Origin: Stylophora pistillata | Lineage: Eukaryota | Direction: 5' to 3' | DNA: 64,000 nt | Assembly: GCF_002571385.2 (NCBI RefSeq) | Contig: NW_019217939.1 | Location: forward strand, 1-64,000 | Shown here: piece after piece, positions 1-21,100 of the stretch | Layout: every line of letters starts with the position of its first letter | Numbering within the stretch: position 1 is the stretch's first letter | The notes under the pieces: generated by a model | What the model was told of the DNA's origin: nothing | Database searches by the model: none | Seen by the model: only the letters and a program-made list of their open reading frames with translations | Translations under genes and position numbers: made by a program

Positions 1-248
1 GTTTTCTAAGGTTTATTATACTTGAGTTGAATTGGTTCGTACTTTCCCTTGCTGACTCCCCAATTGTAAATTTCTGCTTTAAAGACGTAACTGTTTCAGT
101 GGCCAGATAATGTCTATATTATCTCTTTTTTCTATATCGGTAAGAGCATCGAGGTATAAACGGTGATCGAGAGACTATCTTTCCTTACTATGTTTCTAGA
201 CTTCTCCACCGCAGCCGTCTTTTTTAAACTACTTCACTTGTCTTTCAG

Positions 249-515
249 TATTTCGTCAGTATCAACATCATCAAGTGCTTCAACATCGTCGTCAGCGTCA
301 ACATCATCAAGCGCTTCCACATCTTCGTCAGCATCGACATCATCAAGTGCTTCAACATCATCTTCAGTGTCGACTTCATCAAGTGTCTCAACATCGTCGT
401 CAATTTCGACTTCATCAAGCATTTCAACATCGTCGTCGGCATCAACTTCATCAAGCGCTTCAACATCATCATCAGTGTCGACATCGTCCTCTGTTTCCAC
501 ACCAACTACAACGAG
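249..515 (+). CDS. Mucin S/T-repeat exon (267 nt, phase 2-2)
   Basis: ctttcag|T ... ACGAG|gtatg; ends SVSTPTTT. Confidence 0.85.
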
Positions 516-3500
516 GTATGAATTGCATAGACTCAGCTCAATATCTATATTCAGCTCAATATCAGTATCATGTGACAATATGATATTCAAGTCTCACTTT
601 GTACCATTTCGACACAAAAGAATTACAATTAAAGTCTTGATAGTTATGCTTTTTCCCATTAGAATTTGGTTGATATCATACAACCTTTTGTTAGGTTGCA
701 AGCTTTTACTCTTGCAATAAAAAAAATTCTCCTTCGTCTTAATTGCTAAGAGATTTCTTAGACTCCTCAAACATGTACATAGTTTATTTTCGGACTTACC
801 GTATGTTAAAACTTTAGTGCTATGTTAAAGCTTTGTTGTGTACATACAGTTTGATGTGAAATTTTAATCACGTCTTTATTTCAGTGTGTCTACTTCAAGT
901 TCATCAAGTGTGTCAACCTCCTCGAGGTATATATAATGTGTTTTAAAGTTATAAATCTATAATCATATCAAAGATATAAATAATATCAAAGATATAAATC
1001 TATAATCATATTTAAAAGAGTAAATAGATAAACTAATGTGTTAGTCTTTCCGACGCATGAAATTTTTAAATTCTTTTGTAGTGTGTCGACATCGAGCTCT
1101 GCGTCAACTTCGTCAAGTGTGTCAACATCGTCAAGGTAGAAACAAACATAATGGTTTTACATTAGATCTTTAAGTTAAATGAAATTTATGGATCATGTCA
1201 ATTATTGGTCGTAAGGTTTTACATTAGATTTTTAAGTTAACTGAAATTTATATTATTCTGGATCATGTCAATTATTGGTTGTAAGAGGACTAGTTAGTTC
1301 ATTGGTTTTATTTTCATTTAATCTTTTTTCTGCAAATGATTTTTTCTTTTCGCTGTTGTTAATGGACTGTTGTAAACATTGCATTTTTTGCATTTTATAT
1401 GAAACCTTGACAACTACTTTGGTGTTTTATTTTCCAATCAGCGCATCAACCTCAAGTTCTGTGTCGACATCATCATCGGCGTCGACGTCATCTAGTGTTT
1501 CAACACCAACAACAACGACGTATGAATTAGCTCTTTTAGACCTTGTTTATGGACCTCTGTGAATTTTTTGCTGGACATAACTTAGACACTACATCTTATC
1601 ATCTAGTTTATTTACCTCTTCAAAGTTATTAATGGTGTCGTTAATACATGTGATACTATTTTGGGGTATTTAACGCGACGCGACAACGTTTTTTTCACAA
1701 CTGTTTTTAAGAATAAACATGTTTTGATTCAGACTATCTTTACCTCAATATCTGTTGATAAAGGTCGTCAATTTTTATTTTATACTTGAGCTGACTTGGT
1801 CAGTAGTTACCCTTATTGACTCCTTAATTGTAAATTTCTGCCTTGAAGACAGAAACGTTTAAGTAGCCAGATAATTTTTATGCTATCTTAAAATGTTTTG
1901 CTCCTTTTTCGTACACAGTTAAGAGGATCGAGGTGAATAATGGAGATTTAGAGACCTTGTTTGTAGACTTCGTGACGAAAAACCTTTATCCACCGGAACC
2001 GTCTTTCTTAAACTACTTTACTTGTCTTTCAGTATTTCTACATCAAGTTCTGTATCCACATCATCGTCAATCTCGACGTCGTCTAGTGTGTCAACCTCAT
2101 CAAGGTAGTTGGTTATCTCATTTTTGAAGATCAATCCGTGTGATTTCAAATACGCGCCTTTCTCATTTTACTTGGGTAGTTTCCATAAAAAAAACTTCGT
2201 TGACGCAATTGTGATCAACTGGTTTATTTGAAAGTGAAAGTAGAAATAAAGGAAATATTTCTTGTTAAGATTGTCTGAACTCTTTCATAGTATATCTGCA
2301 TCAAGTTCGGCATCAACGTCATCAAGTGCTTCAACCTCGTCTTCACGTTCAACATCATCGAGTGCTTCAACGTATTCGTCAGCATCGACGTCATCAAGTG
2401 TTTCAACGTCGTCGTCAGTGTCGACATCGTCGAGTGCTTCAACGACGTCGTCAGCATCGACGTCGTCAAGTGCTTCAACGTCGTCGTCAGTGTCCACGTC
2501 ATCAAGTATTTCAACATCTTCGTCAATTTCCACCTCATCGAGCATTTCTACATCTTCGTCGGCATCAACATCATCAAGCACTTCAACATCATCATCAGCG
2601 TCTACATCGTCATCTGTTTCGACACCAACTACCACGAGGTAAGGACTTAATCTCGTTAAGATCACAAAAGATGTGACCACTTTCTCTGAGTTCTGAAACG
2701 CATTCTGAACAGTTATTACCCCCAAACAGCTTACCTCAAATAATCCACAGCTGCTTTTTCTCATGCAGACTAAACAATTTTGATCTAAGTCTCACAGACT
2801 TTTAGTTGTGACTAGTCAAATTTGAGCCAAAGATATCATCACCCTTCATTTTCATTATAAATAAATTTTAGTAGATAGGTTAGTACAATCCGAAAGCGTT
2901 TAAATCGTGTAATTATTTTTAGCATTTTGCAAGACCACATATAAGGCATTGAAATTGAATCATTGGTTAAAAAAAAAACAATAGCAGAAAACTTAAAAAT
3001 TTGAAATGGATTGGGCCTTAAGTATCTATAAGCAGTGACAAAGAGTTGGCATTACCGATCGCACAGCAACGAGCAAAATTTAGAAAATTTCGATTAAATT
3101 TTAGTTATATATGTTGCACTTGTTTTCAAATATTCCTTTCTATTTCTCCCTACAGTGTGTCTACTTCAAGTTCGTCAAGTGTGTCTACTTCATCAAGGTA
3201 TCATAAAAATATTTCATACCCATATGCGATTTTAAAGTAAGTTATTGCTTGAGCGAAACTACAAAGCCAATCATAGAAAGTATATGAGCTCTATCTCAAA
3301 TGCCATTACACTTTTCAATTTTATTTTAGTGTTTCGACATCAAGTTCAGCATCGACATCATCAAGCGTTTCAACTTCATCAAGGTAAGGAAAGACAATGG
3401 TGTTACATTACTTCCTACGCCTTTTTAAAACGTTTTATCGTTTGTTAATAACATCGTGTTAACCTCTGCTTTCTTTTTCCTTTTATTGCTAATACCATCA

Positions 3501-6350
3501 ATATAAAACCATTGAAACACAGGTATTTTTATTGATATCATCATTTTTAGCGCGTCAACTTCAAGTTCAGTGTCAACATCTTCCTCGGCGTCGACGTCAT
3601 CGAGTGTTTCAACACCAACAACGACGAGGTAGGAATAATGCTTAAAAGACCTTGTTTCTAGACTTTGTGAGAAAGCCTAACTTTATTCCTAGATTATGTT
3701 GGGCTACTCGTAGTTCTTTGGTATTTCTTAATCATATAATTGCATCCACTTTATCGTCAATCTCAACATCTTCTGGTGAGTTAACCCCGTCAAGGTAAAT
3801 AGCCATCTAAATTTTTAAAGATCATTACGTGTGATCTCAGAATTACATCTTTACCTCTTGGTATAAGTACTTTCTTTCGGGGAACTTTTGCAAGGTTATT
3901 CGGATTAACAGATGAATTTAGATTTAAAAAGAAGAAAGGAAAGAAATCGTTTTGTTTAAGATGTATTATAATATCTCTCCTAGTGCCTCTACATCAAGTT
4001 CGGTATCAACATCATCCAGTGCTTCAACCTCGTCGTCACGGTCAACATCATCAAGTGCTTCAACTTCATCATCGGTATCGACATTCTCCAGCGTTTCTAC
4101 GTCGTCATCAGTGGCGACATCGTCAACTGCTTCAACCTCGTCGTCAGCGTCGACGTCATCAAGTGCTTCAACTTCGTCCTCAGGGTCAACATCATCAAGT
4201 GCTTCAACTTCGTCCACAGCGTCAACATCATCGAGTGCCCCAACATCGTCATCAGCGTCGACATCATCAAGTGCTTCAACTTCTTCGTCAGTGTCCACAT
4301 CATCAAGTATTTCAACATCTTCGTCAATTTCGACCTCATCGAGCATTTCAACATCGTCGTCGGCATCAACATCATCTAGCGCTTCAACATCATCATCAGC
4401 GTCTACATCGTCCTCTGTTTCGACACCAACTACCACAAGGTAAGGACTTAATGTCGTTGAGATTACTATAGATGTGACCATTAAGTCTGCGCTCTGGAAT
4501 GCATTCATAAATAGATATTATACATGAACAGCTTGTCTCACAAAATCTACACCTACCTTTCATAAATAACTTTGAACGATTTTGATCTAAGCGTGGGTTT
4601 ATGTGGTTTTGAATAGTCAGAGCTGTGCCAAAATATTATGAGCCTTTTATTCAGAGTAAATTTTAGTATATTGTATTTATTCTCCTTGAGCGTTCAAATC
4701 GACTCGTTGTCCCAAGTGTTTTACATGATCAAATGAATGACATAAATAATAAACAAAGATTAAAAACTCTGTACTCCACATGTACAAAATAGATATTTAA
4801 ATTAAAAGCAACATAAAATAGGTAAGGCTTCAAGAAGCTTGAAACAAAGACAAAGTATTGGAATTTCTGATAGCACAGCACCAAAGAAATGATTTGTAAA
4901 CTTTATCAAATATTAGTGGTGCTATTCTACATATGTTACAGTCGGTTTCTCATCTTGCTTTTTATTTCTCTCTAAAGTTTGTCTACTTCAAGTTCGTCAA
5001 GTGTGTCAACTTCATCCAGGTATCAAAAAATTTATTTGATTCACAGACGTAATTTTAAAATTAGGGTTACGGCTTGAACGAAGCTACAAAGCCAACCTGA
5101 GAAACCCTTTAAGCTGCCTTTCTAACGCCGTTACATTTTTTTGTATCATTTAGTGTTTCGACATCAAGTTCCGCGTCGACATCATCAAGTGTCTCAACTT
5201 CTTCAAGGTAATGAAAGACGATTGTGTTACAATACTTTTCATGCTTACTTGAAATGTTTTTTCCTTTTATTTGAAGTTTATTAGGAGCATCGTGCTAAGC
5301 TCTCTATTTCGTTTTCTTTTTATTGCACATACCATCAACATAAAGCAATTAAAACGCGATTTTTTTATTATCATCATTTTCAGCGCTTCAACTTCAAGTT
5401 CCGTGTCGACATCATCATCAGCGTCGACATCTTCGAGTGTTTCAACACCAACAACGACAAGGTATAAATGACATTTTAGTGACCTTTTCCTGGATCTCTA
5501 AAGGTGACAACTTTAATTTAATTCTTTTAAGGCTTAACATAATAATTACGAAAGAGATGTATTGACTTTTGTATAAAGGCCCGTGCAAACGCTCGCAACA
5601 ACACGCAACATCGTTGGGCCAACATTGCTGTCTCCTGTTGCGCGAAGTTAGCCCATGTGTGCAAAGGCTCGCAACAAGTGACAACATGTTGGGTCTTTAG
5701 ATGAGAAACTGTAGCCTGTCCAAATAAATCCAACTGGATTTGTAGTTTTCACCTAGTCCTTGGCCAGATATTTTTGCCTCTCGGCCAACTTGAGCACGCA
5801 AACTAGTAATCTTCGCCTTGATTTCTGCAACGTCAATGTCCAGAATGTCTCTCATCTCTTCGGAAGCTCTTTCGCGTTTGCTTCGCATGTGGTAATCCTT
5901 TTTGTTGACATCCTACAAGCAATCTTTTTCCCCAAGAAGATCGATCAGTTGATCGATTTCCGATTCCGTCCACCTTCTAGCTCTTCCTCCGTCTTTTCCG
6001 TCACTAGCCGCTTTCTTTTTGCTCTTGGTTGCTGTTAATTCCCCGATTAATTCCTCGTTCACGTTTTCCATATCCGACACCATGTTGATTTCTTGTTCGC
6101 ATGTATTTGTGTTTTGAAATCTCAGTGGATACGTGGCATGTAGTGCGCATGCACCGGCGCAACATTGTTGGATGTACTGTGAAAACGAACGCAACATTGT
6201 TGGACCACGCTTCGATGACCACGAAACAAGAGAAACGTTGGCACTTGTTGGCTCTGAAGTTTGACCAGTTTCAAACCTCATCCAACAACTTCCAACAAGT
6301 CGTAACAACACGCAACAACACACAACATGGTGTGCAAACGGTCGCAACAT

Positions 6351-6383
<33 letters not shown>

Positions 6384-9300
6384 ACAATGTTGCGAGCGTT
6401 TGCACGGGCCTTAAGCTTGGTATAAAAGTAGCCCCTTTGTTGTACGTGTTTTTATATTCGCCTCGTCGTAAATTTCAAAATCTGTCATTTTCAGTCTCAA
6501 CAGACACACTTTGTTACTTTCTATAACGATATGGTCAATTTGGGTTTGTCCGTAGTCACAGTCATGTGCTCCTAAAGAAAATTATTTAAGCCTCTCAGAT
6601 GTAAAGTTCCATGTAGTGATGATTTAATTATTATTCAAATGATTTTAAAAATGACCATTTATAAAATTTTTGATAAATTGTACAATACATTTCAGTATCT
6701 CTACATCAAGTTCTGCTTCGACGTCTTCGAGTGTATCAACTTCGTCGTCAGTTTCGACCTCCAGCTCTGCCTCAACATCAAGCTCTGCCTCGACATCGAG
6801 CTCCGCCTCGACATCGAGCTCTGCCTCAACATCAAGCTCAGCATCAACATCAAGCTCTGCCTCGACATCGAGCTCTGTCTCGACATCAAGCTCAGCATCG
6901 ACATCTAGCTCTGCCTCGACATCAAGTTCAGCATCGACATCTAGTTCTGCCTCGACATCAAGTTCTGTGTCGACTTCATCATCAATCTCCACCTCATCGA
7001 GTTTGTCGACCTCGTCAAGGTATCGTTATTTCTTGAGCCTGTTTTGAGTGTCCTAAAGTATTTCAATGTTTTTTTAAAAGTTTACTTTACCGTGTAAATG
7101 ATCGGGACAACATCGGGAATAAACCTTGCGGTTTAAAATGAAGCAGACCGCGATCTGGCATTTAAGAAGTTGGATGACGGGCCTTCAATTTGTCTTCAGT
7201 GAGTAATTGCAATGATCTTTTAAAGTTCTGTAACTGAATTGCAGCTGTTCAGGTGATATGCACTATGAGCACTCGTTGTAAAGATGCAAGGAGACAAGTA
7301 TAGTTATCGTTCTGTAAATAAAAACGTTCAAGAAATACTCAGCTTTTTGTTATTTGAAGTCCTTATTTTTTTTTATTTCATAAAGTAAAACGCCAACCTC
7401 AAGTTCTCGCAGTACATCATCAAGGTACGTTGTATATTTTCCACCGTTCTTACCTGAAACTTAATCAACGGTCAAAAACTCACAAACCTAAAATATCCTG
7501 ATTTACGTTTTGAAAGAAATAACATTTAACAGTTTGATGTACTTTTCTTCTTACAGCTCAAGTCTTACCTCCTCAATTTCTTCTTCAATCTCACCGACTA
7601 CATCCTCATCAGTTTCGACATCTGTCTCAAGTAGTAAGTGATTCAACGATTTTAGCAATTGTTAATCTCTATCATCATAGAGGAAATTTATTTAAAATTG
7701 TGTTTCCTATCAAATTTCTTCCCAACGCCTAAAGCCCTAATTTCGAAAAACGGTTCACTTCGATCAAGAATTAAATTTAATAGCTTTAGACTGTAAAAAC
7801 TAACTTTTGGGGGCGTTATTCTTTTTTAGCAATAACCCTTGGCGCAATGGTACTAAGCTAAATCGAATTTAATGGGTTTTTTTTACGCCTTAAAAACCCC
7901 TTTAACTACATTTGCACTTATGATTAAAAAACTGGAAAGTACCACAAACATGATGAATTTGACAAAATTAGGAAGTAATTTTCTCAAGGTGTCTAGTAAT
8001 TACATGTTTTTTGTGTATGCACGTCACAATTTGTGACGTGCCCACGTTTTTTGCAAAGTAATTCTATTTTACTTTTTCTTTCAATTCCAGGTTCAATCTG
8101 TCCAATTTGTGTATACAAAAACAGATTAAATGAAACTGAAAAGCATTACGTAAGTCGAGATTGAGGTCCATTTCTTTCTGTAACTGTTACCAAATATTTC
8201 TTGCCCTCTATAAACAGTATACTGCAGTATGCTGCATAAACCTTTTGGTAAATCAGGCGGCCATTCGATTTGAAACCGTTACAAGGCTCTGATAGACCAT
8301 CAGGCTCTCTAATACTTATCTGCTAACTTTCTGGGCCGATCACGACTGGAGTCACCCTTTCACTCTCAAGATCTGGTTGTCAATTCTCCTTCTGGCTGCC
8401 ACACTTTTCCTTTTAAACTAGTGACACGAATTTTTTGAAAGATTAAGCTAACCTCTACCTAATACGTTTCGGTATTCTTATAACCTTGTTCGCTGGATAA
8501 GTATGGAAATCAATGGGAGAAGTTACTAGTTAATTACTTCTAGGTGTTCATTTTCCTTCACGTCTCAAATTAAGCGATTTAGGAGTAGTATGTTGGGCCT
8601 GTAGAATAATAACCGAGAGGCCTCGGTCCGAGTGTCTCGGCCGAGTAAGATCTAATTAGTTATTCAGGTCACGTAGGTGTACGAGTTAACATAATCTCGA
8701 GCATGCATGTTATACATTGGTTTCTTGACAGACTGTTTTCAAGAAAAGCAGTTTACAACTGTACCGTGACTTATTCTGAAGCATTTTCTTCGTTTCATTT
8801 TAGGAGGGAGAATCCTGGAAGGATGGACCTTGTAAGACTGTTAAATGTAAAGTAGTTGCTAATGACTGCTTTGAAAACAACCAAGTTGCCCTAATAGAAG
8901 TCTACATACAGGAATGTTCTGAATGTCCTAAGGTGAGTGGAGTGCAATCCTTGCAGTGATTGAAATCGAGCGCATTTCTTTTATTTTGTCAAAACAGTTT
9001 GTAGATCAAATATTACCTGTTATAAGACTAAATACCTCGGTAGGGCTTTAATAATTGGCCGCCACGAGTCCATCACGTTGCACATAGGTGTGATCCTGGT
9101 AGCAAACAAAAGAAGTAATTATTTCTCTTTTTTAAAGGGATACCAACGACCATCATCAGAAGATCAGTGCTGTCCAAAATGCGGTTTGTATTTATTCTAT
9201 TCTTCATTCAATATATTTTCTAAAGATGGGGGGGGGGAAGGGGGGGGAAGGGGTGAAAACGACATGTTATGTTGTTATGTGCATATATTTCTCTCTTGAA

Positions 9301-9952
9301 CAGGCAACTCCCAAAAAAATCTCGAATTCAATGTTTGCCATCTTCTTTCAAACCGTCTAGTACAATACTGTTTTCAACCTAGTGAAACAATCTTGAAATA
9401 GTCTTGGCTGATTTTAATGTTGGATGGGACAATTTTTTATTGCGGTTTTGTAGGCTTGACGTTTCAAACGATAATCACACTTAGTTTACTATAATGGCTC
9501 ATATGCATGCGATATTTTTGGTTTATTTTACAGTAAAAACGGAAGAAGATGAGGAGACCTGCAAACTATACCATAACCCGATCCCGAGACACGTTACAAC
9601 CATCGACGGCTGCGTCTCGAAGGAAAAAATAAATGTCACTGAATGCCGTGGTAATTGTTACTCAAAGACTGAAGCATCAACCGTACCACCAGGTTACAAA
9701 AAATGCCACTGCTGCAAGCCAAAATCTGAATACCTAACAAAAATCAATGTCACCTGCACGAGAGGAGGTGAGGTTGAGGAGAAAGAAGCCGAGTTACTTG
9801 TCATCACGGAATGCGAATGCGGGCCACATAGATGCGAGGCAACAGCTTCACACCGCGGTGAAGAAATTCGGAACGAAGACAATGAGCTCGTGGATATGAA
9901 GAAAAAGCGCCGTCGCCGCGCCTTGTCGCGTCTCTTTGCCCTTCCTCCGTAG
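249..9952 (+). CDS. Mucin-like secreted glycoprotein, 3' part (Ser/Thr hexapeptide repeats, VWC-like domain, C-terminal cystine knot); 20 exons in window, 5' end outside window
   Basis: GT-AG exons splice in frame into ~920 codons: (S[AVI]STSS)n, then CPIC..ESWKDGPC..C..CCPKC, then a CTCK with CxGxC and CxC motifs. Stop TAG 9950-9952; AATAAA at 10022 and 10117. Confidence 0.85.
885..926 (+). CDS. Mucin 42-nt repeat exon (unit 1)
   Basis: tttcag|TGTG...TCGAG|gtat; VSTSSSSSVSTSS. Confidence 0.8.
1082..1135 (+). CDS. Mucin 54-nt repeat exon (unit 1)
   Basis: tttgtag|TGTG...TCAAG|gtag. Confidence 0.8.
1442..1519 (+). CDS. Mucin 78-nt repeat exon (unit 1)
   Basis: aatcag|CGCA...ACGAC|gtatga; ends PTTT. 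Confidence 0.75.
2033..2104 (+). CDS. Mucin 72-nt repeat exon (unit 2)
   Basis: ctttcag|TATT...TCAAG|gtagtt. Confidence 0.8.
2291..2638 (+). CDS. Mucin large repeat exon (348 nt, unit 2)
   Basis: ttcatag|TATA...ACGAG|gtaagg. Confidence 0.85.
3156..3197 (+). CDS. Mucin 42-nt repeat exon (unit 2)
   Basis: cctacag|TGTG...TCAAG|gtatc. Confidence 0.8.
3330..3383 (+). CDS. Mucin 54-nt repeat exon (unit 2)
   Basis: ttttag|TGTT...TCAAG|gtaagg. Confidence 0.8.
3551..3628 (+). CDS. Mucin 78-nt repeat exon (unit 2)
   Basis: tttttag|CGCG...ACGAG|gtagg. Confidence 0.8.
3722..3794 (+). pseudogene. Decayed copy (pseudo-exon) of the 72-nt mucin repeat exon
   Basis: Aligns by eye to 2033-2104 and its downstream intron. 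The acceptor AG reads GG, there is an in-frame TAA, and the length is 73 nt. Confidence 0.75.
3984..4439 (+). CDS. Mucin large repeat exon (456 nt, unit 3)
   Basis: ctcctag|TGCC...ACAAG|gtaagg. Confidence 0.85.
4978..5019 (+). CDS. Mucin 42-nt repeat exon (unit 3)
   Basis: ctctaaag|TTTG...CCAG|gtatc. Confidence 0.75.
5154..5207 (+). CDS. Mucin 54-nt repeat exon (unit 3)
   Basis: catttag|TGTT...TCAAG|gtaatg. Confidence 0.8.
5384..5461 (+). CDS. Mucin 78-nt repeat exon (unit 3)
   Basis: ttttcag|CGCT...ACAAG|gtata. Confidence 0.8.
5577..6411 (-). mobile_element. Non-autonomous PIF/Harbinger DNA transposon (835 bp) in a mucin intron
   Basis: Perfect 24-bp TIR AGGCCCGTGCAAACGCTCGCAACA, TAA TSD at 5574-5576 and 6412-6414, many subterminal GCAACA/CCAACA motifs, internal MADF ORF remnant. 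Confidence 0.9.
5697..6083 (-). pseudogene. MADF (Myb/SANT-like) DNA-binding ORF of the Harbinger element, with a premature stop
   Basis: WTESEIDQLIDLLGEKDCL*DVNKKDYH..KRERA..IKAKITSLRAQ..SGQG..YKSSWIY..LQFL read in one frame; TAG at 5913-5915 replaces the conserved Trp. Confidence 0.8.
6696..7019 (+). CDS. Mucin repeat exon (324 nt = 18 x 18-nt units)
   Basis: atttcag|TATC...TCAAG|gtatc. Confidence 0.85.
7386..7424 (+). CDS. Mucin 39-nt exon (KTPTSSSRSTSS)
   Basis: cataaag|TAAA...TCAAG|gtacgt, phase 2-2. Confidence 0.7.
7557..7633 (+). CDS. Mucin last S/T-rich exon (phase 2-1)
   Basis: cttacag|CTCA...AGTA|gtaagt. Confidence 0.8.
8091..8149 (+). CDS. Mucin exon, start of Cys-rich region (SICPICVYKNRLNETEKHY)
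   Basis: attccag|GT...TAC|gtaagt, phase 1-0. Confidence 0.85.
8352..8552. mobile_element. Degenerate ~200-bp MITE-like interspersed repeat
   Basis: Resembles (recalled, not searched) an abundant coral MITE that begins ttaaccctttaactcccaagatctg; termini are decayed. Confidence 0.4.
8804..8932 (+). CDS. Mucin VWC-like exon (EGESWKDGPCKTVKC...ECSECPK)
   Basis: ttttag|GAG...AAG|gtgagt, phase 0-0. Confidence 0.85.
9138..9183 (+). CDS. Mucin exon (GYQRPSSEDQCCPKC), end of VWC-like domain
   Basis: tttaaag|GGA...TGCG|gtttgt; CCPxC motif. Confidence 0.85.
9534..9952 (+). CDS. Mucin terminal exon: CTCK domain plus polybasic tail
   Basis: tttacag|TA; 11 Cys including CRGNC, CHCC and CEC; stop TAG. 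Confidence 0.9.
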
Positions 9953-11662: not shown

Positions 11663-12236
11663 TATAATTGACCAATCCTAATGAAGAGTTGTATCACACC
11701 TACTATATTGATCTTAGCCATACGCATTGATGTGTTCGTCCCTTCGGAGGTGCAATTTAAGGTATCTTAAAGTCCCTTCTTCGGACTGCTCCACGTTTGA
11801 GAACATCCAGATTTATCCTTCAAAAGTTTGTATAAAAATGACTAACTTTGTAACGAAACGACTTTTTACATCTATAGAAACGACTTTATCGATGCATCGA
11901 ATCGACTGTGTCGATGTTATCGAATCTACTGGTCCCCAGAGAAAACAATATTATTTAGTTTGGTAAAAGGTTTAGTACTTAATCTTTAAAGAATTAAAGT
12001 GTTCGACGAATGAACGCAAGTTATAGTAATAACTGTATGTATGCCGATACTTATTTTTCATCTGGACAATAAGAATATTAAACAAGCGAGAGTTCATAAT
12101 TATAAAAAAATACATTAAGAACTGTGATCGTTACTGAAGTTACTTAAATTCAAGAGTGTCGGAGTTCATCTCAACCCTCAGCTCATCTAGAAAACAAATC
12201 AAGTGCCGTGCCTCTGAGATTGATATATTTTGGTAG

Positions 12237-12361
12237 GAATTAAATACCACTACAGATAACAGACCCTACGATGGAACCGAGTTCGATTTACGTATTAAAT
12301 ACAGATAACAGAATTAAATACAGATAACAGACCCTACGATGGAACCGAGTTCAATTTACGT
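12237..12361. repeat. Local tandem duplication (tacagataacagaccctacgatggaaccgagttc x2)
   Basis: Direct repeat of ~42 nt with a partial third copy in between. Confidence 0.85.
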
Positions 12362-15023
12362 TTCCAATAGGTAATCGCTAGATGTCGGGAGAATTCCTTA
12401 GATAAAAAACTGTATTCATCATTAACATGGTGAGCCAGCAAGATATTTGGGAGTGTGGGAGGGAGGAAAAATAGTCCTGACAAGAGAGCAGAGTTGCTTG
12501 TCTCGTTCGTGTAAGAATAAAGATAGAGATCACGTTCAACGACCACCTATTCTAATGGGAAAGTTCCCTCTGATTGAAAGGTTATAGAATTCTCAGGTGA
12601 GGTCATCTGAAAAGTCAGTGATCGAATGTGTTGGCAAGGCTGACTCAAAGCCTAAACAGAAACTTACTTGTTGATTAACAAATGTATTTTCTATTTTCAA
12701 TACATTATGATACAATACTCAAGGTCATTTTATTCATGACGATGATTAGCTTCGACAATGTTGAATCAGTGAAGGCGTTTGAAGCAATCTTTCCATAGTA
12801 CACTCCACGTTTGGTAACTAGCCATTCTTTACTTGAAAATCAACATAAAGGGCGGGTCTTGGAAAATCTTACGGGGCTAAAAGAAGTTATGGAGTCAAAG
12901 CGAATGTATACATGAAGGACACTGTTTGCTTTTTCATGTTATTAATGACAGGTCTGTCTCATGGACGTTTTATTGCATAAATTGTGGCGGCAATTTTCTG
13001 TAAACGTGCGCCTTCGTATTTGAATTCTAATGACTTAATACAAAAGCAATACAGCTGTCACGAAGGAAAAGAAAATGGACAAAAGAACAATTCACCATCT
13101 TTGACCTCCATGGTATCTTCTTCGATCGCGATTTCGACTTTTCAGCGCTCCTAATTCATACACAATTTATCAACTTTACCAAAGTTCATTTAGTGAAGCT
13201 GTGACTTTGCCTTTTAATTGTGAGGGTTTCAATGGGTTGACGGCTATCGTATTCAAATTCAAGGCGAATATCTATTGTTTGAGTTCGTCAATGTATTTAC
13301 GAAATCTTTGATGGAATGAATCTTACCAAGGATGTGGACTGAGGTTGATTTTCCTCAAATAACTACCCAACACTATTTGCGTCTCTCGTGTTTTTAATGA
13401 ACAAACATCGTTTCAACATCATTTAAAGCCAACAATACTTTAAACAAGAGTATAAAAATAACTTTGCATTTCTGTAACTACTAACTAATATACATGTATC
13501 TGAGGACACTATGTTACATTGCTTAGAGTCCTGTAAAAATATTTCATCTTTACTCATTTAGGGAAGGAAGAAAATCGATTACTTCTGATTAAAGAGTCTG
13601 AATGAACCATTTCGTTTTAAATGTCACGTCAAACTTCTTAAAAAGGATTTCTAGCATGTAATTCAGATATGAGAAAGGCAGATTTGCCACAAAAGGTTGC
13701 TTGTTGTAAGGCCTCTTCGTTACAATGTGACTTATTTTTGTATTGACAACTGTACTTGTTGACAAATTTATGAATAGCGACCGGAATACAGAGAGCCTTA
13801 CAAGTTCATCATGATAAAATCAGTAAACTTATGTTAAGATAAATCATCTAACTTGAAATGTTCTCCACTGAAGGCACGGCCCTACCTTATGAACCGTGAC
13901 CAATGTTTACCAGGAATCTGGTTACTTTCGGCGAACGAGCTTATGGATATTCATATAAATAATGGTATGAATGTTCTTCAATATAATTTAACAAGTACAT
14001 TGCTGTATAGAAATTGCAGGTCGTGTAAAATAAACCGCTGCGAAGCGCTAAAAAGTGCTTTGAACGTATTGCGTTGAGAAGGGAGGGGGGAGATGATATA
14101 CAAAATTAGAAACCAAGTATTCATCTCTATATACAAGACCATCTGTGGAAAAAATATATTACTTATAAAAGGTTCTTTCCAAACGGAGGTAATCACAGCC
14201 ATTGCCCTTTAACTGTGATTGTGACCTAAAAATAAGAGAATAAAAACTTTGTGAAGCCAAATTTTCCTTTCAGCAGCAGCAAATCACCGTGGATGCAGCT
14301 TGTGAGAAGGAATTCAGCAACAGGATTTTTTCTGAGTTCAGATAGCTGCAACTAATCAGTTAAATGGTTGCGAGAATTCTCGAAAGTTATGCAAACCCGA
14401 CCCGCACTCGAGAGTTCGCATATCTCCCTCGGGTTTTCCCACCCCCCTCGGGTTTTTCCATCCCCAGGTACTTTTTTTAGTTACCATTCTCTGGTCCAAA
14501 CACAGCTGTCGACCTTACAGAACGCATGTCAAATTTCATTCCCCTCATAAAGATATATACCCCAAAACGGGTAACATGATTATGGTCTCACAAGACAAAC
14601 TTACTCCAAAACAAAATACGTCGCACTAGCCAAGTGGCCAAAAACGACAAGAGAGATTGTTTAAGTTTCCGCGACATCACATTGCGAAGAACTCCCCTAG
14701 ATGGCTATTCGTCGTATTAGGGGTTTACCCGCCCCCACCCCCTTCTGCCTCTCTCTTCTCCGCCATCCAGCAGTTTTGTCAAGTTTCTCTGAAAGATCAC
14801 CAGTACCCATTTAGAATCGTAAGAGGAGAGGGGTAACGTAAGGGGTACTGTAAGAGCTCTTTATATCGCCCAAGAAAACCAAAATGCAAACAAGCCCTGG
14901 AAATCTGGGGGAAATCTTTCTCTCTCCTCATTTGAAGATTTCAAGAAGGATAAGTAAAGTACTTGCTTGAAATCCAAACGCGATAAAAACTTACCAACGA
15001 TTTAAATGTTATGCCGGGATGAA

Positions 15024-15110
15024 TTAATTCGTTTCAGCTGCTGTCGCGGCACTGGAGCGAGGACTGGGAATCGCTAGATCCAAGATCCACGTCATACAGC
15101 AGTGGAGTGC
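15024..15110 (-). CDS. Nesprin-like putative last coding exon (ALHCCMTWILDLAIPSPRSSAATAAETN*)
   Basis: tttgtctag|GCA phase-0 acceptor; TAA at 15026-15024; donor TG|gtaagt at 14995/14994. Confidence 0.55.
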   Translation of the reverse strand, partial: ALHCCMTWILDLAIPSPRSSAATAAETN

Positions 15111-18100
15111 CTAGACAAACACAGAGCGAACGCACAAAACATTATAGATTTATAGGCGTATTTGTGACATGCGCAGACGTTATTCAGTGCTGCCCTCTAT
15201 TTTCAAACCCATTGTCAGCCCTGATCAAGATTTAAATATTACCTGTTGCCATCTGGAGTTAAGTTCGTCCATCGCCTGTTGTACTGGTTGGAATTCCGAC
15301 GAGGAACAATACTCTCGCATGGCTTTTCCTTGGTGTAGCAAAGTTCTAAGCTTCGCATAGTTCATATTGATGAGTCTTTGTAAGCCCTAAAAGGATTCAA
15401 AACTAAGTTGAGATAAAAGTGTGGATCATGTTGTCTACTACATTTTTATCGTTATCAACCAAACCATTGTTGAAAAGCCCGCAGTACGTGTCTGAAGCTA
15501 TGCAAGATCTGCTATATAACATCGGCTCCTTTAGCAAATGACTTCAAAAGTCAGAACAAACTTATCTGCGGCTCTGTATAACATTCTGACCTAAGCGTCA
15601 GCTCTAGAGAATAATTAAAAGCACCACATAAAAACAAAACAAACAAACGAAAATAAAAAGCAAAAAAAAAAAAAAACCTTCGAGTACCGTTCATTTAAAA
15701 GAATCAAAAACTTAAAAATGTAAACATGGCTTGGTAAATATCCATCATTACTTACTTCCACTCCGGTGTATAATTATTAATCAACTAATATTGTACAACA
15801 CTAGGGGAGAGACCATTAAAAGTAAGTTAATACTTCAAATAAATGAAGCCCTAATACCTTAAGTTTTTCAAGCTGAACTCTCGGCTCCGCCTCCGAAGTA
15901 TAAGGATCGAGGGTAATCAGCTTGAGTTCCGCTTCCGTTAAAAAGCTGTACACCTCCTGCCGAAGGGTTTCAAATTTTTCCACCTTGTCCGACAACTTGC
16001 TATAGAGATGGAGACGATTTTCTACGCGACTAAAAATCGCTCCCCACCGGCTCTGTATTGACTCCACCCCAACTCTGACATCGGAAGCAGAAGTAGTATT
16101 GGCTTCCAGCAGCAGGTATTTACTCCGCTTGATGATACGCTCCATCTGCGGACGATGCGAATTGACGTCTTTCAGAAATACCTGGAGGAGAATCAAAGAG
16201 AATTATTTTGCGTATCCTAACTTGCTCTAGAAACGACGGGTTTCAAAACAATGGACACGATAGGGCCGGTTATTTGTACGAGATCTAACAGAAACCACGG
16301 TTTTACGCAGTCAGAGGGCCTGAGGCTTTCTCTATAAGAGGGTTGAATTGATTAAATAAATGTCCTTCCACTGTTAGCTTTCGGCCCTCTTGACGATGTC
16401 CACAAAAATAAAATATTCAGATAATCAGATAAAAGGTCGTGCTAAATTGAGGATTGTTTAGGACGCAATTTTGTTGAATAACGGCTAAACTTTGTTTATA
16501 TAATCAGACCTATAAGTCGAGTACAACTCTGAAAAAAAAAATAAATAAATATAGGCTGATTATAATCTTACACAATAATCTGGATTCCAACCTTTAGGCT
16601 AGCCTTACCTCAAACCTTTTGAATTTACTCTTTGAGACCTCCAATCCTGATGACATTGCTTCCTCAGATTTTGTAACAGATGCTTCTGTCAGGTCAATCC
16701 ACTCCACAAACTTCTCATATTCGTTCCAAAACTCTCTGCATAGCACCATTCTCTCTTCCGCTTGCCTTCTTTTCGCTGACACAGTGTGGCGAGCATTTAT
16801 CCAGCGGTTTTCAAAACTCTCTTTAGTCCTCTGGAGACTTTGACGATCCTCTTCTGAAGGGCAAGCCATGCGATCCCGGCGAAGTTTCTAGAAATTAATG
16901 AGACATACATTTTGTTATAATCACTGACCACAATACTGTGCGGGGGACTTTACCAGACTGCCAGTGGCAGTTTACAATGAACAAAGGCGAATTATTTACA
17001 GATGCCCCCTACCCCCAATTGCTGTAGCCAGGCCAGACCACATCTCGGGATCTCGTGATGTGCGTTCTTTAACGTCCCCTGCCTAATCAAATTATCTAAT
17101 TAAAGATGCAGGGAGACGGGACCTACGGTTTATTCGTCCTTATCCGAGAAGACTACAATGTCCGTCCATTTCTTGATATTATAGAAGGTTAGCACATTCT
17201 TCTCAGTTATTTTAAGACTATGAGTGTTGGTCCGGCCGGAGCTCGAACCCTCGACCTCCCGCACAACAGTCCAGCGCTCTAACCAGTTGAGCTAACCGGG
17301 AGGCGGTTAGCTCAATCTCTATAGAGGTTCTGCATGGCAGCCATGTTGAATGGCAGGAACAATCAAAATACTTTGCATAAGAAAGAAAATGTTTTCCCAT
17401 GGGAAAAATAATATATTGTTCCTGCCATGCAACATGGCTGTTGTGCAAAAGCTCTATACGGTGGATCGCGCGCTATGTTTGTTGACACATCCGCTGGGCC
17501 CAGAAGGTTGGTAAGAGGTCAATCACAAGTTATTATTGAATAATAGAACCTATTTTCATTCAAAGAATACCTCACACAATCGGAGAACCGTTTGTACGTC
17601 AGTGGCGCGTCGTTCTACATCTGTTTCAGTATCCTACAAATTAAAATGAACTGTTCATTCGCACATCCTTAAGTGAAATTAATTCAGTCGCTCAGATTCA
17701 TGTTACGGCTTGCGGTAGTTGACAAGTTTTCTTTAAAACACATGTTTAGCCTTACATACCACTCACTGGAATGGAATTACATTCAAACCTATAAAGGGTT
17801 CTGTGATAAGTCTGTTGGTTAAGTCACCTAACCTCCATTTTCAAACCTGACTTACCAAGTTTTGGGCAGATTTAACCCCTGAAAACTTTTTCCGTGGCAA
17901 GTATTGACAAGCGCCGACAAAACATTTCTCCGTGTTTATTTCTCTTTCATACTGCCAAAAACATGTCAAAATAAATTTTTCTTGCAAATTTGCAATGGCA
18001 AACTTAAAATATATTTTCAATTGCACAGAGATAGAAAGGTTGCCAAGCGAACGCTTCTTGAAAAGTTTGGGAAGGAAAAACTTCTTGCATTTTCTAAAAT

Positions 18101-21100
18101 GCACTGTCTGCCGAAATTGTGCTACTCCAAATGCGACTTCATTTCAGTCTGTTTTCAGATTAAAAAGGAATGCTTATTACTGTACGACACAAGGTCGTGA
18201 CAATCGACAGAAACAGAGAAAAAGGTGGTTCCGGACATTTTGATAATTACCTTCATTTCCTTCACTTTCCTTTGAAGCTCGGAAACAACACAGGAGCTTA
18301 CGACAGAAAATTCCCTCAATTTCGTCTCTACTTCAGCCATCCATGTGTTGAGTTGCTTGAGTTGAATCTCCAATAGTTTCAACCCGTACCTGGTTTCCTC
18401 TGCCTTCTTGTATGTGATTCCCAACTGCTGACACAAAGCGCGCCAGCGGTCATTCAGGTTTTTCTGTTTCTCAGCAACTGCACCTGCGTAAGGCGTACCA
18501 CCCGCCTTGCTTATGACGTAGTACGCACTTTCGTTCAGAGTCGACCTGGTGTTCTCGTGACCTTCTATGTCAGCTACATAAACCTGTGTAGATAAAAAAT
18601 GCAATGGTTAACTTCCATGCTAAGGGAACCATGCCACAGTTTCACAAAGTTTCTCATAAGGAGCTTTCCTCGAGGTGAAGATGGTAAAATAAGGCAAGTT
18701 TTTCCACGGCAGGTGATCTCTGAGGTGGCAAGAAAGAGAATGCAGCTTCAAAGTGGTACAGCTTTGGAAATAGTCTCTGTGAAATGTAAAGTATTATCAA
18801 ATACCATTTTGAAGAAAAATAACTTTTGTTTACAAAATGATTGTTATCATCGCCACACAGCATTCTCTAGTGCTTGACTTGCATCATATCCACTACAAGC
18901 ATGCAAATAAATCTGTTCCCGACTGGAATCTGCGACATTATCACCTTGCCGACTGAGGCAAATAGACAAACGAGCCAAACGTCTAAGACATCAAACCTGA
19001 AAGACGGTATCTCCTTGATCATCCGGGATACTGAGAAACGACTCTTCAAGTTCACGTGTTACCGACGACTCAATATTAACCAACCAATCAGAGAGGGCTT
19101 CATGCAGTTGACTAAACTGTTGGAAATGTCTTAAGATCTCAGCCAAGGACTGCATGGAACTTGACAGTAGGTGACAAACGCTTCCCCAAAGAGTGGTCAT
19201 GGAGGCAACTTGTTTCTTGATCCGTTCTGAGTCGTACTGATCCGTTGATTTCGAAAGCTCTTCCGCACGCCAGCTGATTTTATCCAGCTGAGGTTTCCGT
19301 TCATCGATCTCTCCGGCGATAGCCTATGGATGGTAAATAGAACTTGTTGCCTAAAACTTACGAACTCTTTAATTCCCAAAAATGTAACTGTTCCTCAAAA
19401 CATCAATAAATCATTCTACATGGCTAGTAAGTTGAAAAGTTAGTGTCGAGCCCTGATGTATGCTGTTGCTAATAAATAAATAAATAAATGAAAAGTTTCT
19501 TTGCATCTAAACGACTGATATGATAAATAAGTCGGTCTGCGAAAACGCTGCATCATAGGTGGAGTATGAAGGGAACTTTCTCGTTTCGGTACTATTTCCC
19601 TCAGTTTGAGGTTTCCCTCACACTTGCACGTGCTAGAATGATGGCCTACCGTAAATTGTGTGTCAAAAGGCTTCTGGACCTCAAAGCTAGAAACGCATGT
19701 CGAAATACGCATCAACGTTCCATTAAGAATGCTCAATATTACACTTGATGTAGTTACCTTCATGGCGCCTAGCTCCCTCTCAACGTCACGAACTGTTAGG
19801 GCCTTGGACTGAGCTCTGAGTACTTTCTCCTTCTCTCTCAACCACACCATCAGGTTCTCAGTGAGTGACGTGTACTCCTGCCAATCTTTTAGTGAAAGCT
19901 CTAATTGTTGCTGGTTGCTTGTCACACGATTTGTTATCATTGTCCATTGCCTCGTTACCTTGTCGAGTTCTCTGGCGGCTTTGTTACCTAAACTTCCTGG
20001 AGTTTCTTCGATTATCAGCTGACCAGTAGAGCAGAAGTTGTTGTACTCTGGTCTGTGAGCATTGATCTCCTTTTGGCACATCTAGAAGTATAAAAACAAC
20101 TTTTTGGCAAAACCATTACTTCCATTTTCAGGTTGCCACGTTAAGTGTTTAGAATGATAACGCGCTATGCTAAGTCAGGCAAACAAGAGTAGAGAGATGG
20201 TTTCCAGATAAGAGTTGACCACTACTATCTGACTGCGTGTTATGCTGTTGATAATTACTTCGGGATATTCCCTTTCGCTGGAAGGAAAACTTTAGGGTTG
20301 CTGGAACAGAAATGCGCCAAAGAGGTAACGGAATGATCCTCGAAGGTGAAATGCAATTAATGAAAATTCAGATATTTTCCTTATTTCAGTTGATCTAAGT
20401 GGATAATTTTGTTACCTGTTATCACCCACAGGTTAGACAGGGCTCGACACTAACGGTAGCCAACTAGCCACAGACTAGTAGAAATTCAGTTTTGGCTAGT
20501 GGTTTTTTATTTCCACTAGCCAGTTTGGCTAGTAAACAAACTGAAATTGTTGTAACATCTAAGTTGTCACTAACCATTTGGCTAGTAAGTTGAAAAGTTA
20601 GTGTCGAGCCCTGAACTTTTTAGACTTAATTCATTTCATTGGATACGCAATCTTCTTTGTTTTAGTGGATTGCCCTTTGGGGGATCATTTCGTTCCTTCT
20701 TATCATCCGCAAGTTAAACTACGATTATGTCTTTATACTAGCAGCAAACGCCTGAGGGCTATAGAAAAGAGTAACAAAAGTGACAAGAATAGTAAAATGT
20801 GGAAAAGTTCGGTATGGATTTGAAAATTTTGTTTCAACATCGTTACCTTGACATGTTCAAAGTGGACCTTCATTTGTTGAATGCTCGCGGACGATGGAAC
20901 TGTAAATCCGCTGTGCGTTTCAATTCCATCCATCCACTTTATCAAAGCTGAACTCACACATTGGAATTCTTTCAATCTTTCATTCTGCCGACCAACTTGC
21001 TCTTTGTGTTCATCTGCTCTCTTCAGCACAGAGCTCCATAATTGACGTACGTGCGACATATTATCATCAAGTCGTGTCTTGTAATTGCTCCCTGTGAGCA

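What the first reader, a model, noticed from the sequence alone, without database searches (positions are those of the whole stretch)
14143..16887. Giant nesprin-1-like gene appears to end just before the adaptive domain, LEWD motif and KASH anchor
Seen: the last repeat exons (17633 to 15243) are followed by a short non-repeat exon and a stop at 15024. I found no LEWD motif, no convincing transmembrane exon and no PPPx* terminus between 10.1 and 15 kb, and a convergent mucin gene lies beyond. Established (recalled): in nesprin-1/2 the homologous repeats are followed by the adaptive domain with the kinesin-1-binding LEWD motif, further repeats and the KASH domain. Inference: either a KASH-less >800-kDa cytoskeletal scaffold not tied to the LINC complex, or the KASH exons lie beyond the window and the whole mucin gene is nested antisense in a nesprin intron.
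Basis: partly seen in the sequence, partly recalled or inferred. Interest (0 to 1): 0.75.

Follow-up and report, generated by a model that had tools for sequence, protein, structure and literature searches.

The report
Coral nesprin-like giant gene lacking KASH
A giant actin-binding, spectrin-repeat gene of a coral, related to the nesprins that tie the nucleus to the cytoskeleton, really does stop short of the nuclear-membrane anchor in its main messenger RNA, so in this animal it probably works as a free cytoskeletal scaffold.

Summary
RNA from three runs splices the minus-strand exons exactly as read: 17633-17571, 16887-16609, 16181-15858, 15386-15243, then 15110-14995 with TAA at 15026-15024. 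New here is a 3'UTR intron (14994-14226) and a last exon that ends near 13381, after an ATTAAA signal.

The 28-residue tail is real coding sequence. In three other coral sequences its first 18 codons show 5-7 silent changes and 0-1 replacements.

The last three large exons match a fish nesprin-2-like protein in order and end to end (residues 1493-1794). That stretch lies just before its LEWD adaptive domain and KASH. The spectraplakin orthologue is a separate gene on contig C35.

Searches of the whole 398-Mb assembly found no KASH, no adaptive domain and nothing like the nesprin C-terminus. GAS2 and SUN control searches did find their targets.

The KASH-less reading is therefore supported for the main mRNA. 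The reading that the mucin gene is nested in a nesprin intron is not. A rare KASH isoform cannot be excluded, because the window starts at a contig end, the assembly is fragmented and cross-phylum sensitivity is low.

KASH-less nesprin isoforms are already known in mammals and flies. The scan has no note of this on other DNA.

The parts
18158..18607 (-). Open stretch holding the third-from-last large repeat exon. Its exact splice sites were not determined.
   Evidence: Pfam Spectrin, 29.9 bits. Best match to nesprin-2-like P0063 at residues 1493-1593, 22.3 bits. The genome-wide search with P0063 hits C156:18191-18484.
17571..17633 (-). Exon A (21 codons, phase 0).
   Evidence: Translation. RNA joint 16887|17571 in X2, X10 and X24. 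Conserved at 82-84% nt in coral metagenome contigs.
17120..17320 (.). tRNA-derived SINE-like repeat in the intron between exons A and B. It is not part of the mRNA.
   Evidence: Very high multi-copy RNA depth and many loose ends. ARAGORN calls no tRNA here. The same motif recurs on other contigs.
16609..16887 (-). Exon B (93 codons), spectrin repeat.
   Evidence: RNA joints. Pfam Spectrin_SYNE1, weak. P0063 residues 1593-1683, 18.8 bits, the highest score for this exon among 20 target proteins.
15858..16181 (-). Exon C (108 codons), spectrin repeat.
   Evidence: RNA joints. Pfam Spectrin. P0063 residues 1682-1794, 21.0 bits. Exon-sized orthologues at 63%, 52% and 38% identity.
15243..15386 (-). 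Exon D (48 codons), helices of the last repeat, ending ...LNSRWQQ.
   Evidence: RNA joints 15386|15858 and 15110|15243. Conserved with 10-12 replacement codons of 48 in other corals. Aligns in the expected slot of P0063 (1796-1838); 16 of 500 shuffles score as well.
14995..15110 (-). Exon E: the last 28 codons (15110-15027), TAA at 15026-15024, and 29 nt of 3'UTR.
   Evidence: RNA joints D|E (25 reads) and E|terminal exon (20 reads). The first 18 codons show 5-7 silent and 0-1 replacement differences in L025/L026, L028 and L029. In those contigs a stop at the equivalent place is followed by 18 nt and a GT donor.
14226..14994 (-). 3'UTR intron (GT..AG), retained at a low level.
   Evidence: Joint 14223|14993 (cut +2), skipping 769 nt, in X2, X10 and X24. 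Intron contigs have depth 15-22 against 258-276 for the exons. Splice sites were read.
13381..14225 (-). Terminal 3'UTR exon.
   Evidence: X24 depth is 42-56 and drops to 0 below the 13342 bin. Six molecules end at 13381. The X2 contig ends at 13411 in adapter sequence. Pieces are conserved in L025, L026 and L028.
13393..13398 (-). ATTAAA polyadenylation signal.
   Evidence: Read directly. It lies 12 nt upstream of the molecule ends at 13381.
9494..9952 (+). Last coding exon (C-terminal cystine knot) of the convergent mucin-like gene. It is a neighbour, not part of the nesprin-like gene.
   Evidence: Pfam Cys_knot, 29 bits (cut-off 24), and DAN, 28.1 bits. ORF listed.
163..7047 (+). Ser/Thr-rich repeat exons of the same mucin-like gene, which runs off the contig end at position 1.
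   Evidence: ORFs. The window is C156:1-64000.

Best explanation
This is the true 3' end of the main mRNA of a coral homologue of nesprin-1/2.

The gene spans at least 86 kb on the minus strand. It starts with two calponin-homology (actin-binding) domains at 99.6-90.2 kb of the contig. A Ser/Pro-rich linker follows, then a spectrin-repeat rod with crudely 7,000 or more residues of open repeat-like frame, including one 2,380-codon exon.

The rod stops at the end of the repeat that, in vertebrate nesprin-2, comes just before the adaptive domain. A conserved 28-residue tail (ALHCCMTWILDLAIPSP... plus a Ser/Ala-rich end) closes the protein. A short 3'UTR intron is then spliced out and the RNA is cleaved about 12 nt after an ATTAAA signal.

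Shown: the splicing, the stop, the polyA-proximal end, the conservation of the tail, the in-order match to nesprin-2, and the failure to find KASH or the adaptive domain in the assembly.

Inferred: the product is a very long actin-binding scaffold that is not inserted in the outer nuclear membrane and not held by SUN proteins. It would act like the KASH-less nesprin isoforms of mammals and flies. Its conserved Cys-Cys/Trp tail would serve as a docking or lipid-attachment site.
For: - Splicing and the 3' end: one search shows all five joints with GT..AG ends in X2, X10 and X24. D|E has 25 reads against 29+4 for C|D, so most transcripts that reach exon D go on to exon E. Six molecules end at 13381, and first mates lie almost only on the + strand, as expected for a minus-strand RNA in a stranded library. 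The signal ATTAAA was read.
- Conserved tail. In the contigs with three distinct sequences (L025 = L026, L028, L029) the first 18 codons carry 5-7 silent and 0-1 replacement changes. Exon D carries 10-12 replacements in 48 codons. The stop and the UTR donor are kept.
- Nesprin homology: searches place exon 18607-18158 at P0063 residues 1493-1593 (22.3 bits), exon B at 1593-1683 (18.8) and exon C at 1682-1794 (21.0). The best hits in the 19 other targets compared (11 carry spectraplakin-type names) are scattered. In one search the whole P0063 searched against the genome returns 6 matches, 3 of them exactly these exons. One search shows P0063 has SYNE1/LEWD at 1886-1918 and KASH at 2311-2369.
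- Not the spectraplakin: a MACF1-like query gives 17 of 21 matches on C35 (up to 146.7 bits, GAS2 at 73% identity) and only 3 weak ones on C156.
- CH domains.
- Absence of the missing parts: KASH HMM best 21.5 bits, below the cut-off of 23, and the top hits are low complexity. PF25035 gave 0 matches. The last 400 residues of P0063 gave one E = 4.4 hit, on the C35 spectraplakin. Of 139 GPPPx-stop sites, 100 were listed and 40 inspected, and none is KASH-like.
- Controls that worked: GAS2 up to 68.8 bits and SUN up to 82.5 bits, found exon by exon.
Against: - Only about 2% of the raw-read run was read, and 122 loose-end rows were not shown. A rare isoform that leaves exon D or E could have been missed.
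- The window starts at base 1 of its contig and the assembly has 5,513 contigs with N runs. Downstream exons could be unassembled.
- Cross-phylum sensitivity is low. Even the matching nesprin region reached only E = 0.018-0.117 genome-wide, so equally diverged terminal repeats would be near the detection limit.
- Of 20 cluster representatives of exon C hits that I looked up, 11 have spectraplakin-type names or domains and only one is a nesprin. The distant hits of the giant exon are dystonin-like, though that search could not see proteins over 4,165 aa.
- Exon E has no significant match to nesprin; 474 of 500 shuffles score as well.
- The function of the tail is pure inference.
Confidence: 0.72

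Rival explanations
1. The stop at 15024 belongs to an alternative KASH-less 3' end, as in mammalian SYNE1/2 and fly Msp300. A rarer isoform would skip it and splice to adaptive-domain and KASH exons that lie beyond the contig end or in unassembled DNA. The mucin-like gene would then sit inside a very long nesprin intron.
For: The window starts at contig base 1, so nothing downstream of the mucin gene can be seen. The assembly is fragmented. KASH-less and KASH-bearing isoforms coexist in known nesprin genes (search listing and abstract openings of PMC3388047 and PMC11230431). The genome has two SUN-domain loci that presumably need partners. Only 2% of X24 was read and the loose-end table was truncated.
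Against: No joint from exon D or E to anywhere else is listed. D|E read support (25) is close to C|D (29+4). No spectrin-like frame lies on the minus strand in the 13 kb below the polyA site, nor in the 3.6-4.8 kb downstream in two other corals. No KASH, no PF25035 and no match to a nesprin C-terminus was found on any of the 5,513 contigs. The terminal exon is under strong purifying selection, which is not expected of a throw-away exon.
Confidence: 0.15
2. The gene is not a nesprin homologue. It is a separate, perhaps cnidarian-specific, giant CH plus spectrin-repeat protein, or an offshoot of the spectraplakin rod. In that case the lack of KASH is not a loss or truncation of anything.
For: Named distant hits of exon C and of the 2,380-codon exon are nearly all dystonin, MACF1 or shot. 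Identities to nesprin-2 are only 23-24%. Pfam Spectrin_SYNE1 (PF25034) is also precomputed on dystonins, so it is not diagnostic. No defining nesprin feature (KASH, adaptive domain) is present.
Against: Three consecutive exons each independently pick three consecutive, abutting repeats of nesprin-2-like P0063. None of the 19 other targets compared shows such an ordered, abutting series. In the reverse direction, the best genome-wide matches for that nesprin region include exactly these exons. The spectraplakin orthologue is clearly elsewhere. The architecture (tandem CH, more than 60 repeats, no plakin, EF-hand or GAR domain seen) fits nesprin-1/2 giants best.
Confidence: 0.12
3. The apparent end is an assembly artefact: a chimeric join between a nesprin-like gene and unrelated DNA at 10-15 kb.
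For: The locus lies within 15 kb of a contig end. I have no read-level DNA evidence for 10.1-13.4 kb.
Against: Spliced RNA contigs run without a break from 17635 to 13428. Independent coral contigs are colinear through exon E and into the UTR, down to window 13421. No N run lies below 30174. The transcript has its own polyA signal.
Confidence: 0.02

Closest known systems
Nesprin-1/2 giant (SYNE1/SYNE2; fly Msp300 and worm ANC-1 named from memory)
   Same: N-terminal tandem CH domains. A very long spectrin-repeat rod. The last three large exons are colinear with the repeats that precede the adaptive domain of a fish nesprin-2-like protein.
   Different: No adaptive domain or LEWD, no further repeats and no KASH, either in the transcript or detectably in the assembly. 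It has its own conserved 28-34 residue tail. One exon holds 2,380 codons.
KASH-less nesprin isoforms of mammals and Drosophila (PMC3388047, PMC4948682, PMC11230431; search listing and abstract openings only)
   Same: A nesprin-type spectrin-repeat protein that ends at an alternative stop before KASH and is expected to act away from the LINC complex.
   Different: In those species KASH-bearing isoforms come from the same gene. Here none was found. The KASH-less end is the dominant one, its terminal exon is conserved between corals, and it keeps the CH domains and the whole rod.
Spectraplakins (MACF1, dystonin, shot)
   Same: CH domains plus a long spectrin-repeat rod. They are the commonest named distant hits of single exons.
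   Different: No EF-hand or GAS2 end. The coral's spectraplakin orthologue, with GAS2, is a separate gene on contig C35. Exon best hits to spectraplakins are not colinear.

Membership tests
Nesprin-1/2 (KASH-domain spectrin-repeat proteins) | C-terminal KASH domain (transmembrane helix plus lumenal peptide ending PPPx; Pfam PF10541). | tested here: not met
   The transcript ends at 15024 with no TM and no PPPx. Genome-wide the PF10541 search gave a best score of 21.5 bits, below the cut-off of 23, and the hits are low complexity or repeats. The last 400 residues of nesprin-2-like P0063 gave nothing but one E = 4.4 hit on C35. Of 100 listed GPPPx-stop sites, 40 were inspected and none is KASH-like. 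P0063 itself scores 74.4 bits on PF10541.
Nesprin-1/2 (KASH-domain spectrin-repeat proteins) | Adaptive domain with the W-acidic LEWD motif (Pfam PF25035). | tested here: not met
   No LEWD or [LIVM]EW[DE] in any of the six frames of the window. PF25035 gave 0 matches at E <= 10 in the assembly (nothing rang in the control genomes either, so the search has no positive control).
Nesprin-1/2 (KASH-domain spectrin-repeat proteins) | N-terminal pair of calponin-homology domains (giant isoforms). | tested here: met
   Exon-sized pieces at C156 98.5, 96.7, 95.2 and 91.0 kb match PF00307 positions 18-48, 79-108, 20-44 and 41-86, at 13-23 bits each. The sequences were read. Each piece is below the whole-domain cut-off because the domains are split by introns.
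Nesprin-1/2 (KASH-domain spectrin-repeat proteins) | Long rod of spectrin repeats. | tested here: met
   PF00435 with E = 3.2e-49 and 11 stretches in the 2,380-codon exon. There are further Spectrin and Spectrin_SYNE1 hits, one above its cut-off at 40.3 bits against 35.
Nesprin-1/2 (KASH-domain spectrin-repeat proteins) | Sequence orthology of the rod to nesprin rather than to other spectrin-repeat families. | tested here: inconclusive
   For: the last three exons match P0063 residues 1493-1794 in order and end to end, and are recovered in the reverse search. Against: identities are 23-24%, the genome-wide E-values are 0.018-0.117, and most named hits of exon C are spectraplakins. No tree was built.
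Spectraplakin (MACF1, dystonin, shot) | C-terminal EF-hands and a GAS2/GAR domain. | tested here: not met
   The terminal exons have no such Pfam hit and the mRNA ends at about 13.38 kb. GAS2 exons lie on C35, C169, C34 and C43. A MACF1-like query maps to C35 with 17 of 21 matches.
Spectraplakin (MACF1, dystonin, shot) | Plakin domain (with SH3) after the CH domains. | tested here: inconclusive
   None of the 10 N-terminal open stretches scanned gave a plakin or SH3_10 hit, and a Ser/Pro-rich exon follows CH2. Not all exons were scanned, and an N run lies at 79323-82225 of the contig.
KASH-less nesprin isoform (alternative 3' end of a KASH-bearing gene) | A KASH-bearing isoform is made from the same gene. 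| tested here: inconclusive
   No alternative joint was seen and no KASH was found in the assembly. However, the contig ends 13 kb downstream and the RNA sampling was shallow.

The most novel reading that the evidence does not exclude
In reef corals, and perhaps in anthozoans generally, the nesprin-1/2 homologue never carries KASH. The genome keeps SUN-domain genes but has no canonical KASH and no LEWD adaptive domain. The giant actin-binding rod instead ends in its own strongly conserved Cys-Cys/Trp peptide. If so, the giant rod and the nuclear-envelope anchor are separable modules in evolution: either the anchor was lost in this lineage or it was joined to the rod elsewhere. Coral SUN proteins would then use a different, still unknown outer-membrane partner.
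Probability: 0.3. Interest if true: 0.75.

Novelty: new variant of a known kind. Interest (0 to 1): 0.55.

Why it matters
Nesprins are defined by their KASH anchor, and the giant isoforms are usually explained as ropes between actin and the nucleus. Here the main product is a full-length giant that keeps the actin-binding head and the whole rod but ends, in a conserved way, just before the adaptive domain and KASH.

That would show the rod has a conserved job away from the nuclear envelope. It also makes testable when rod and anchor were joined or parted, and what SUN proteins bind in cnidarians.

A 2011 survey lists SUN, LUMA and LEM proteins but nothing under KASH for Nematostella (PMC3198171, Table I, passages seen). 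That fits, but it rests on an old gene set.

If instead a rare KASH isoform exists, the case is an ordinary alternative 3' end, of the kind known in mammals and flies.

Tried and rejected
- Weak KASH hits rejected: the three best (C4, C98, C418) are poly-Leu/Ile runs. C132 and C43 share one repeated sequence. C536:3220-3300 looks a little like the lumenal part but runs 7 residues past the expected end, has no acceptor site, and has no TM or repeat exons within 30 kb.
- C259:94333 (…TNGPPPV-stop) rejected: no TM or spectrin-like frame within 40 kb upstream, and it is flanked by C-rich and G-rich simple sequence.
- PPLPPPHL-stop at window 9237 rejected: it is a poly-C run in the last intron of the mucin gene.
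- The exhaustive profile search with exon C found no long spliced protein from a close relative, so it could not show what follows this exon in other corals. The word search with the giant exon cannot see proteins above 4,165 aa, so giant nesprins were out of its reach.
I used a metagenome scan instead.
- Exon E does not align significantly to nesprin, so I make no homology claim for the tail.
- The size estimate (37 open pieces, 7,034 aa) is crude.
- Literature: searches for KASH/nesprin/cnidaria, nesprin/Nematostella and KASH/LINC complex/cnidarian found no paper on cnidarian nesprins or KASH. PMC7227075 (passages) has nothing on it. Supplements were closed and were not asked for; supplementary tables of these papers might list cnidarian KASH proteins.
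All searches were exon by exon.

Full report
**What the window is.** The window is bases 1-64000 of contig C156 (599,814 bases) in a 397.6-Mb assembly of 5,513 contigs. Window position 1 is therefore a contig end. The public runs that hold this DNA are labelled as a coral or a coral metagenome. The finding concerns the 3' end of a minus-strand gene.

**Checking the observation.** Translating the minus strand gives clean phase-0 exons:
- A: 17633-17571
- B: 16887-16609
- C: 16181-15858 (108 codons)
- D: 15386-15243
- E: starts at 15110 and reads ALHCCMTWILDLAIPSPRSSAATAAETN, then TAA at 15026-15024

Pfam sees spectrin repeats in B and C and nothing in D or E. I laid two polyA contig runs, one random-primed run and one raw-read run on 11750-17700. 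Every predicted junction appears in X2, X10 and X24 with GT..AG ends. Raw-read support in X24 is 14+1, 23+1, 29+4 and 25+0 for A|B, B|C, C|D and D|E.

Exon E ends at 14995, 29 nt after the stop. A 769-nt intron is removed (20 reads), and a final untranslated exon runs from 14225 to about 13381. There the depth falls to zero and six molecules end. An ATTAAA signal sits at 13398-13393. By the rule known from vertebrates (recalled, not tested here), a stop this close to the last junction should not trigger nonsense-mediated decay.

No other joint leaves exon D or E. First mates lie almost only on the + strand, as expected for a minus-strand RNA in a stranded library. The motif claims also hold. 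No LEWD-type motif occurs in any frame of the window, no TM-like stretch lies on the minus strand at 9.9-15.2 kb, and the single PPx-stop is a poly-C run.

The neighbour is indeed a convergent mucin-like gene. It has Ser/Thr repeat exons at 163-7047 and a cystine-knot exon at 9494-9949, above the Pfam cut-off.

**Is exon E a real C-terminus?** A metagenome scan with an alignment of exon C orthologues returned ten coral-like loci at 74-77% identity. Four of them reach past exon D. blastn shows that exons A-E are conserved at 72-87% while the introns are not.

In L025 (identical to L026), L028 and L029 the first 18 codons of exon E encode the same peptide as here, with one Arg-to-His change in L029. 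They carry 5-7 silent codon differences and 0-1 replacements. Exon D carries 10-12 replacements in 48 codons. The tail then turns Ser/Ala-rich and ends at a stop that is followed by 18 nt and a GT donor, the same layout as in the window. The terminal exon is therefore under purifying selection in its reading frame and is not a chance open frame. Nothing that looks coding lies in the 3.6-4.8 kb beyond it in L025 and L028.

**What the gene is.** Upstream, the contig carries two CH domains in pieces at 99.6-90.2 kb. A Ser/Pro-rich exon follows, then repeat exons all the way down. These include a 2,380-codon exon with 11 Pfam spectrin stretches. A crude sum of open repeat-like pieces is about 7,000 residues.

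Searches by single exon first pointed away from nesprin:
- The giant exon finds coral ORFs at 34-73% identity and then dystonin-like proteins at about 20%. That search cannot see proteins longer than 4,165 aa.
- Exon C, searched without any length limit against 1.84 billion representatives, gave 32 hits. The close ones are exon-sized ORFs.
- Of the 20 representatives I looked up, 11 have spectraplakin-type names or domains and one is 'nesprin-2-like' from a pipefish (P0063).

That one hit proved informative. P0063 has a Pfam SYNE1 domain around its LEWD motif (residues 1886-1918) and a KASH domain at 2311-2369. The last three large coral exons each pick as their best match three consecutive, abutting stretches of it: 1493-1593, 1593-1683 and 1682-1794 (22.3, 18.8 and 21.0 bits). 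Their best matches in the 19 other targets compared, 11 of which carry spectraplakin-type names, are scattered.

In the reverse direction, the whole of P0063 searched against the assembly returns six matches. Three are exactly these exons and three lie in a large exon on contig C35. Exon D fits the next slot, 1796-1838, where 16 of 500 shuffles score as well. Exon E has no significant match.

A MACF1-like query puts 17 of its 21 matches on C35, including a GAS2 exon at 73% identity, and only three weak ones on C156. The spectraplakin orthologue is therefore a different gene. I conclude that the C156 gene is most likely the nesprin-1/2 homologue, and that it ends about where the nesprin adaptive domain would begin. 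I do not file it as a nesprin, because the defining KASH domain was tested and not met.

**Where are the missing parts?**
- The KASH HMM found nothing above 21.5 bits (cut-off 23) in the assembly. The hits are low complexity, a repeat, or lack context.
- The adaptive-domain HMM found nothing at E <= 10. That search has no positive control.
- The last 400 residues of P0063 found only an E = 4.4 match on the C35 gene.
- A pattern for Gly-Pro-Pro-Pro-x-stop gave 139 sites, fewer than the 367 of the reversed control. 100 were listed. I dropped 60 by eye (TGG endings, the SINE family, poly-C runs, duplicate copies, or a stop at x) and inspected 40. None has a KASH-like frame.

The same exon-by-exon method did find GAS2 (up to 68.8 bits) and SUN domains (up to 82.5 bits, two loci). 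These negatives are suggestive, not proof. The assembly is fragmented, 39 pattern sites were not listed, and the nesprin region that does match reached only E = 0.018-0.117.

**Mechanism.** Shown: an mRNA for a giant CH plus spectrin-repeat protein that ends in a conserved short tail, without a membrane anchor.

Inferred: the protein binds actin through its head and acts as a long cytoplasmic scaffold or spacer not tied to SUN proteins, like the KASH-less nesprin isoforms. Its conserved Cys-Cys-Met-Thr-Trp tail may be a docking or lipid-attachment site. That last point is a guess from the sequence alone.

**Known and new.** KASH-less nesprin variants are well documented in mammals and flies (search listing and abstract openings of PMC3388047, PMC4948682 and PMC11230431). 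What differs here:
- The KASH-less end is the dominant and perhaps the only one.
- It retains the full giant rod and the CH head.
- Its terminal exon is conserved among corals.
- No KASH or adaptive domain is detectable in the genome.

A 2011 survey lists no PF10541 protein for Nematostella (PMC3198171, Table I, passages seen). Three literature searches found nothing on cnidarian nesprins. I rate this a new variant of a known kind, with interest 0.55.

**Limits.** Supplements were closed and not consulted. The earlier notes of this scan that I found are all on this same window; nothing was noted on other DNA.

Noticed in passing
window 17120-17320 (also C156 about 89.2-89.4 kb and C536 about 16.9 kb): A tRNA-derived SINE-like element sits in the intron between exons A and B. 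It has enormous multi-copy RNA depth and many loose ends. Its 'CCGCCTCCCGGTTAG' core recurs on many contigs. ARAGORN calls no tRNA here.
   Followed up: partly
G000 contig C35, about 251.9-296.7 kb, minus strand: The coral's spectraplakin (MACF1/dystonin-type) orthologue. It has a GAS2 exon at 251964-252095, 73% identical to a horseshoe-crab MACF1-like protein, and a 1,214-codon repeat exon near 281-285 kb.
   Followed up: partly
G000 contigs C210 (344.9-346.9 kb) and C44 (771.1-772.2 kb): Two SUN-domain loci (up to 82.5 bits), although no canonical KASH partner was found in the assembly.
   Followed up: no
window 14229-15022: Low-level retention of the 3'UTR intron. RNA contigs cover it at depth 15-22, against 258-276 for the flanking exons.
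   Followed up: no
window 13833 and 15013: Sites where RNA runs show two different alternative bases (G to C and G to T). These are probably population variants among coral samples, and one lies in the 3'UTR part of exon E.
   Followed up: no
window 5913-6350, minus strand: A 145-codon ORF inside the mucin-like gene, with a '...RRWTESEIDQLIDLLGE...' stretch that looks like a Myb/MADF-type transposon remnant. The resemblance is recalled, not tested.
   Followed up: no
window 38653-39234, minus strand: The open frame holds a run of LLLC repeats (a CTG/TGC-type simple repeat) just before a spectrin-like exon. Whether any of it is coding was not checked.
   Followed up: no
C156 89391-90356, minus strand: A 322-codon open stretch begins with the end of CH2. 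It continues as a long Ser/Pro/Thr/Lys-rich, probably disordered, linker before the rod.
   Followed up: no
window 30174-31130; C156 79323-82225 and 92823-93915: N runs inside the gene, one of them between the CH2 exons. Some exons may be hidden, so the protein length cannot be fixed from this assembly.
   Followed up: no
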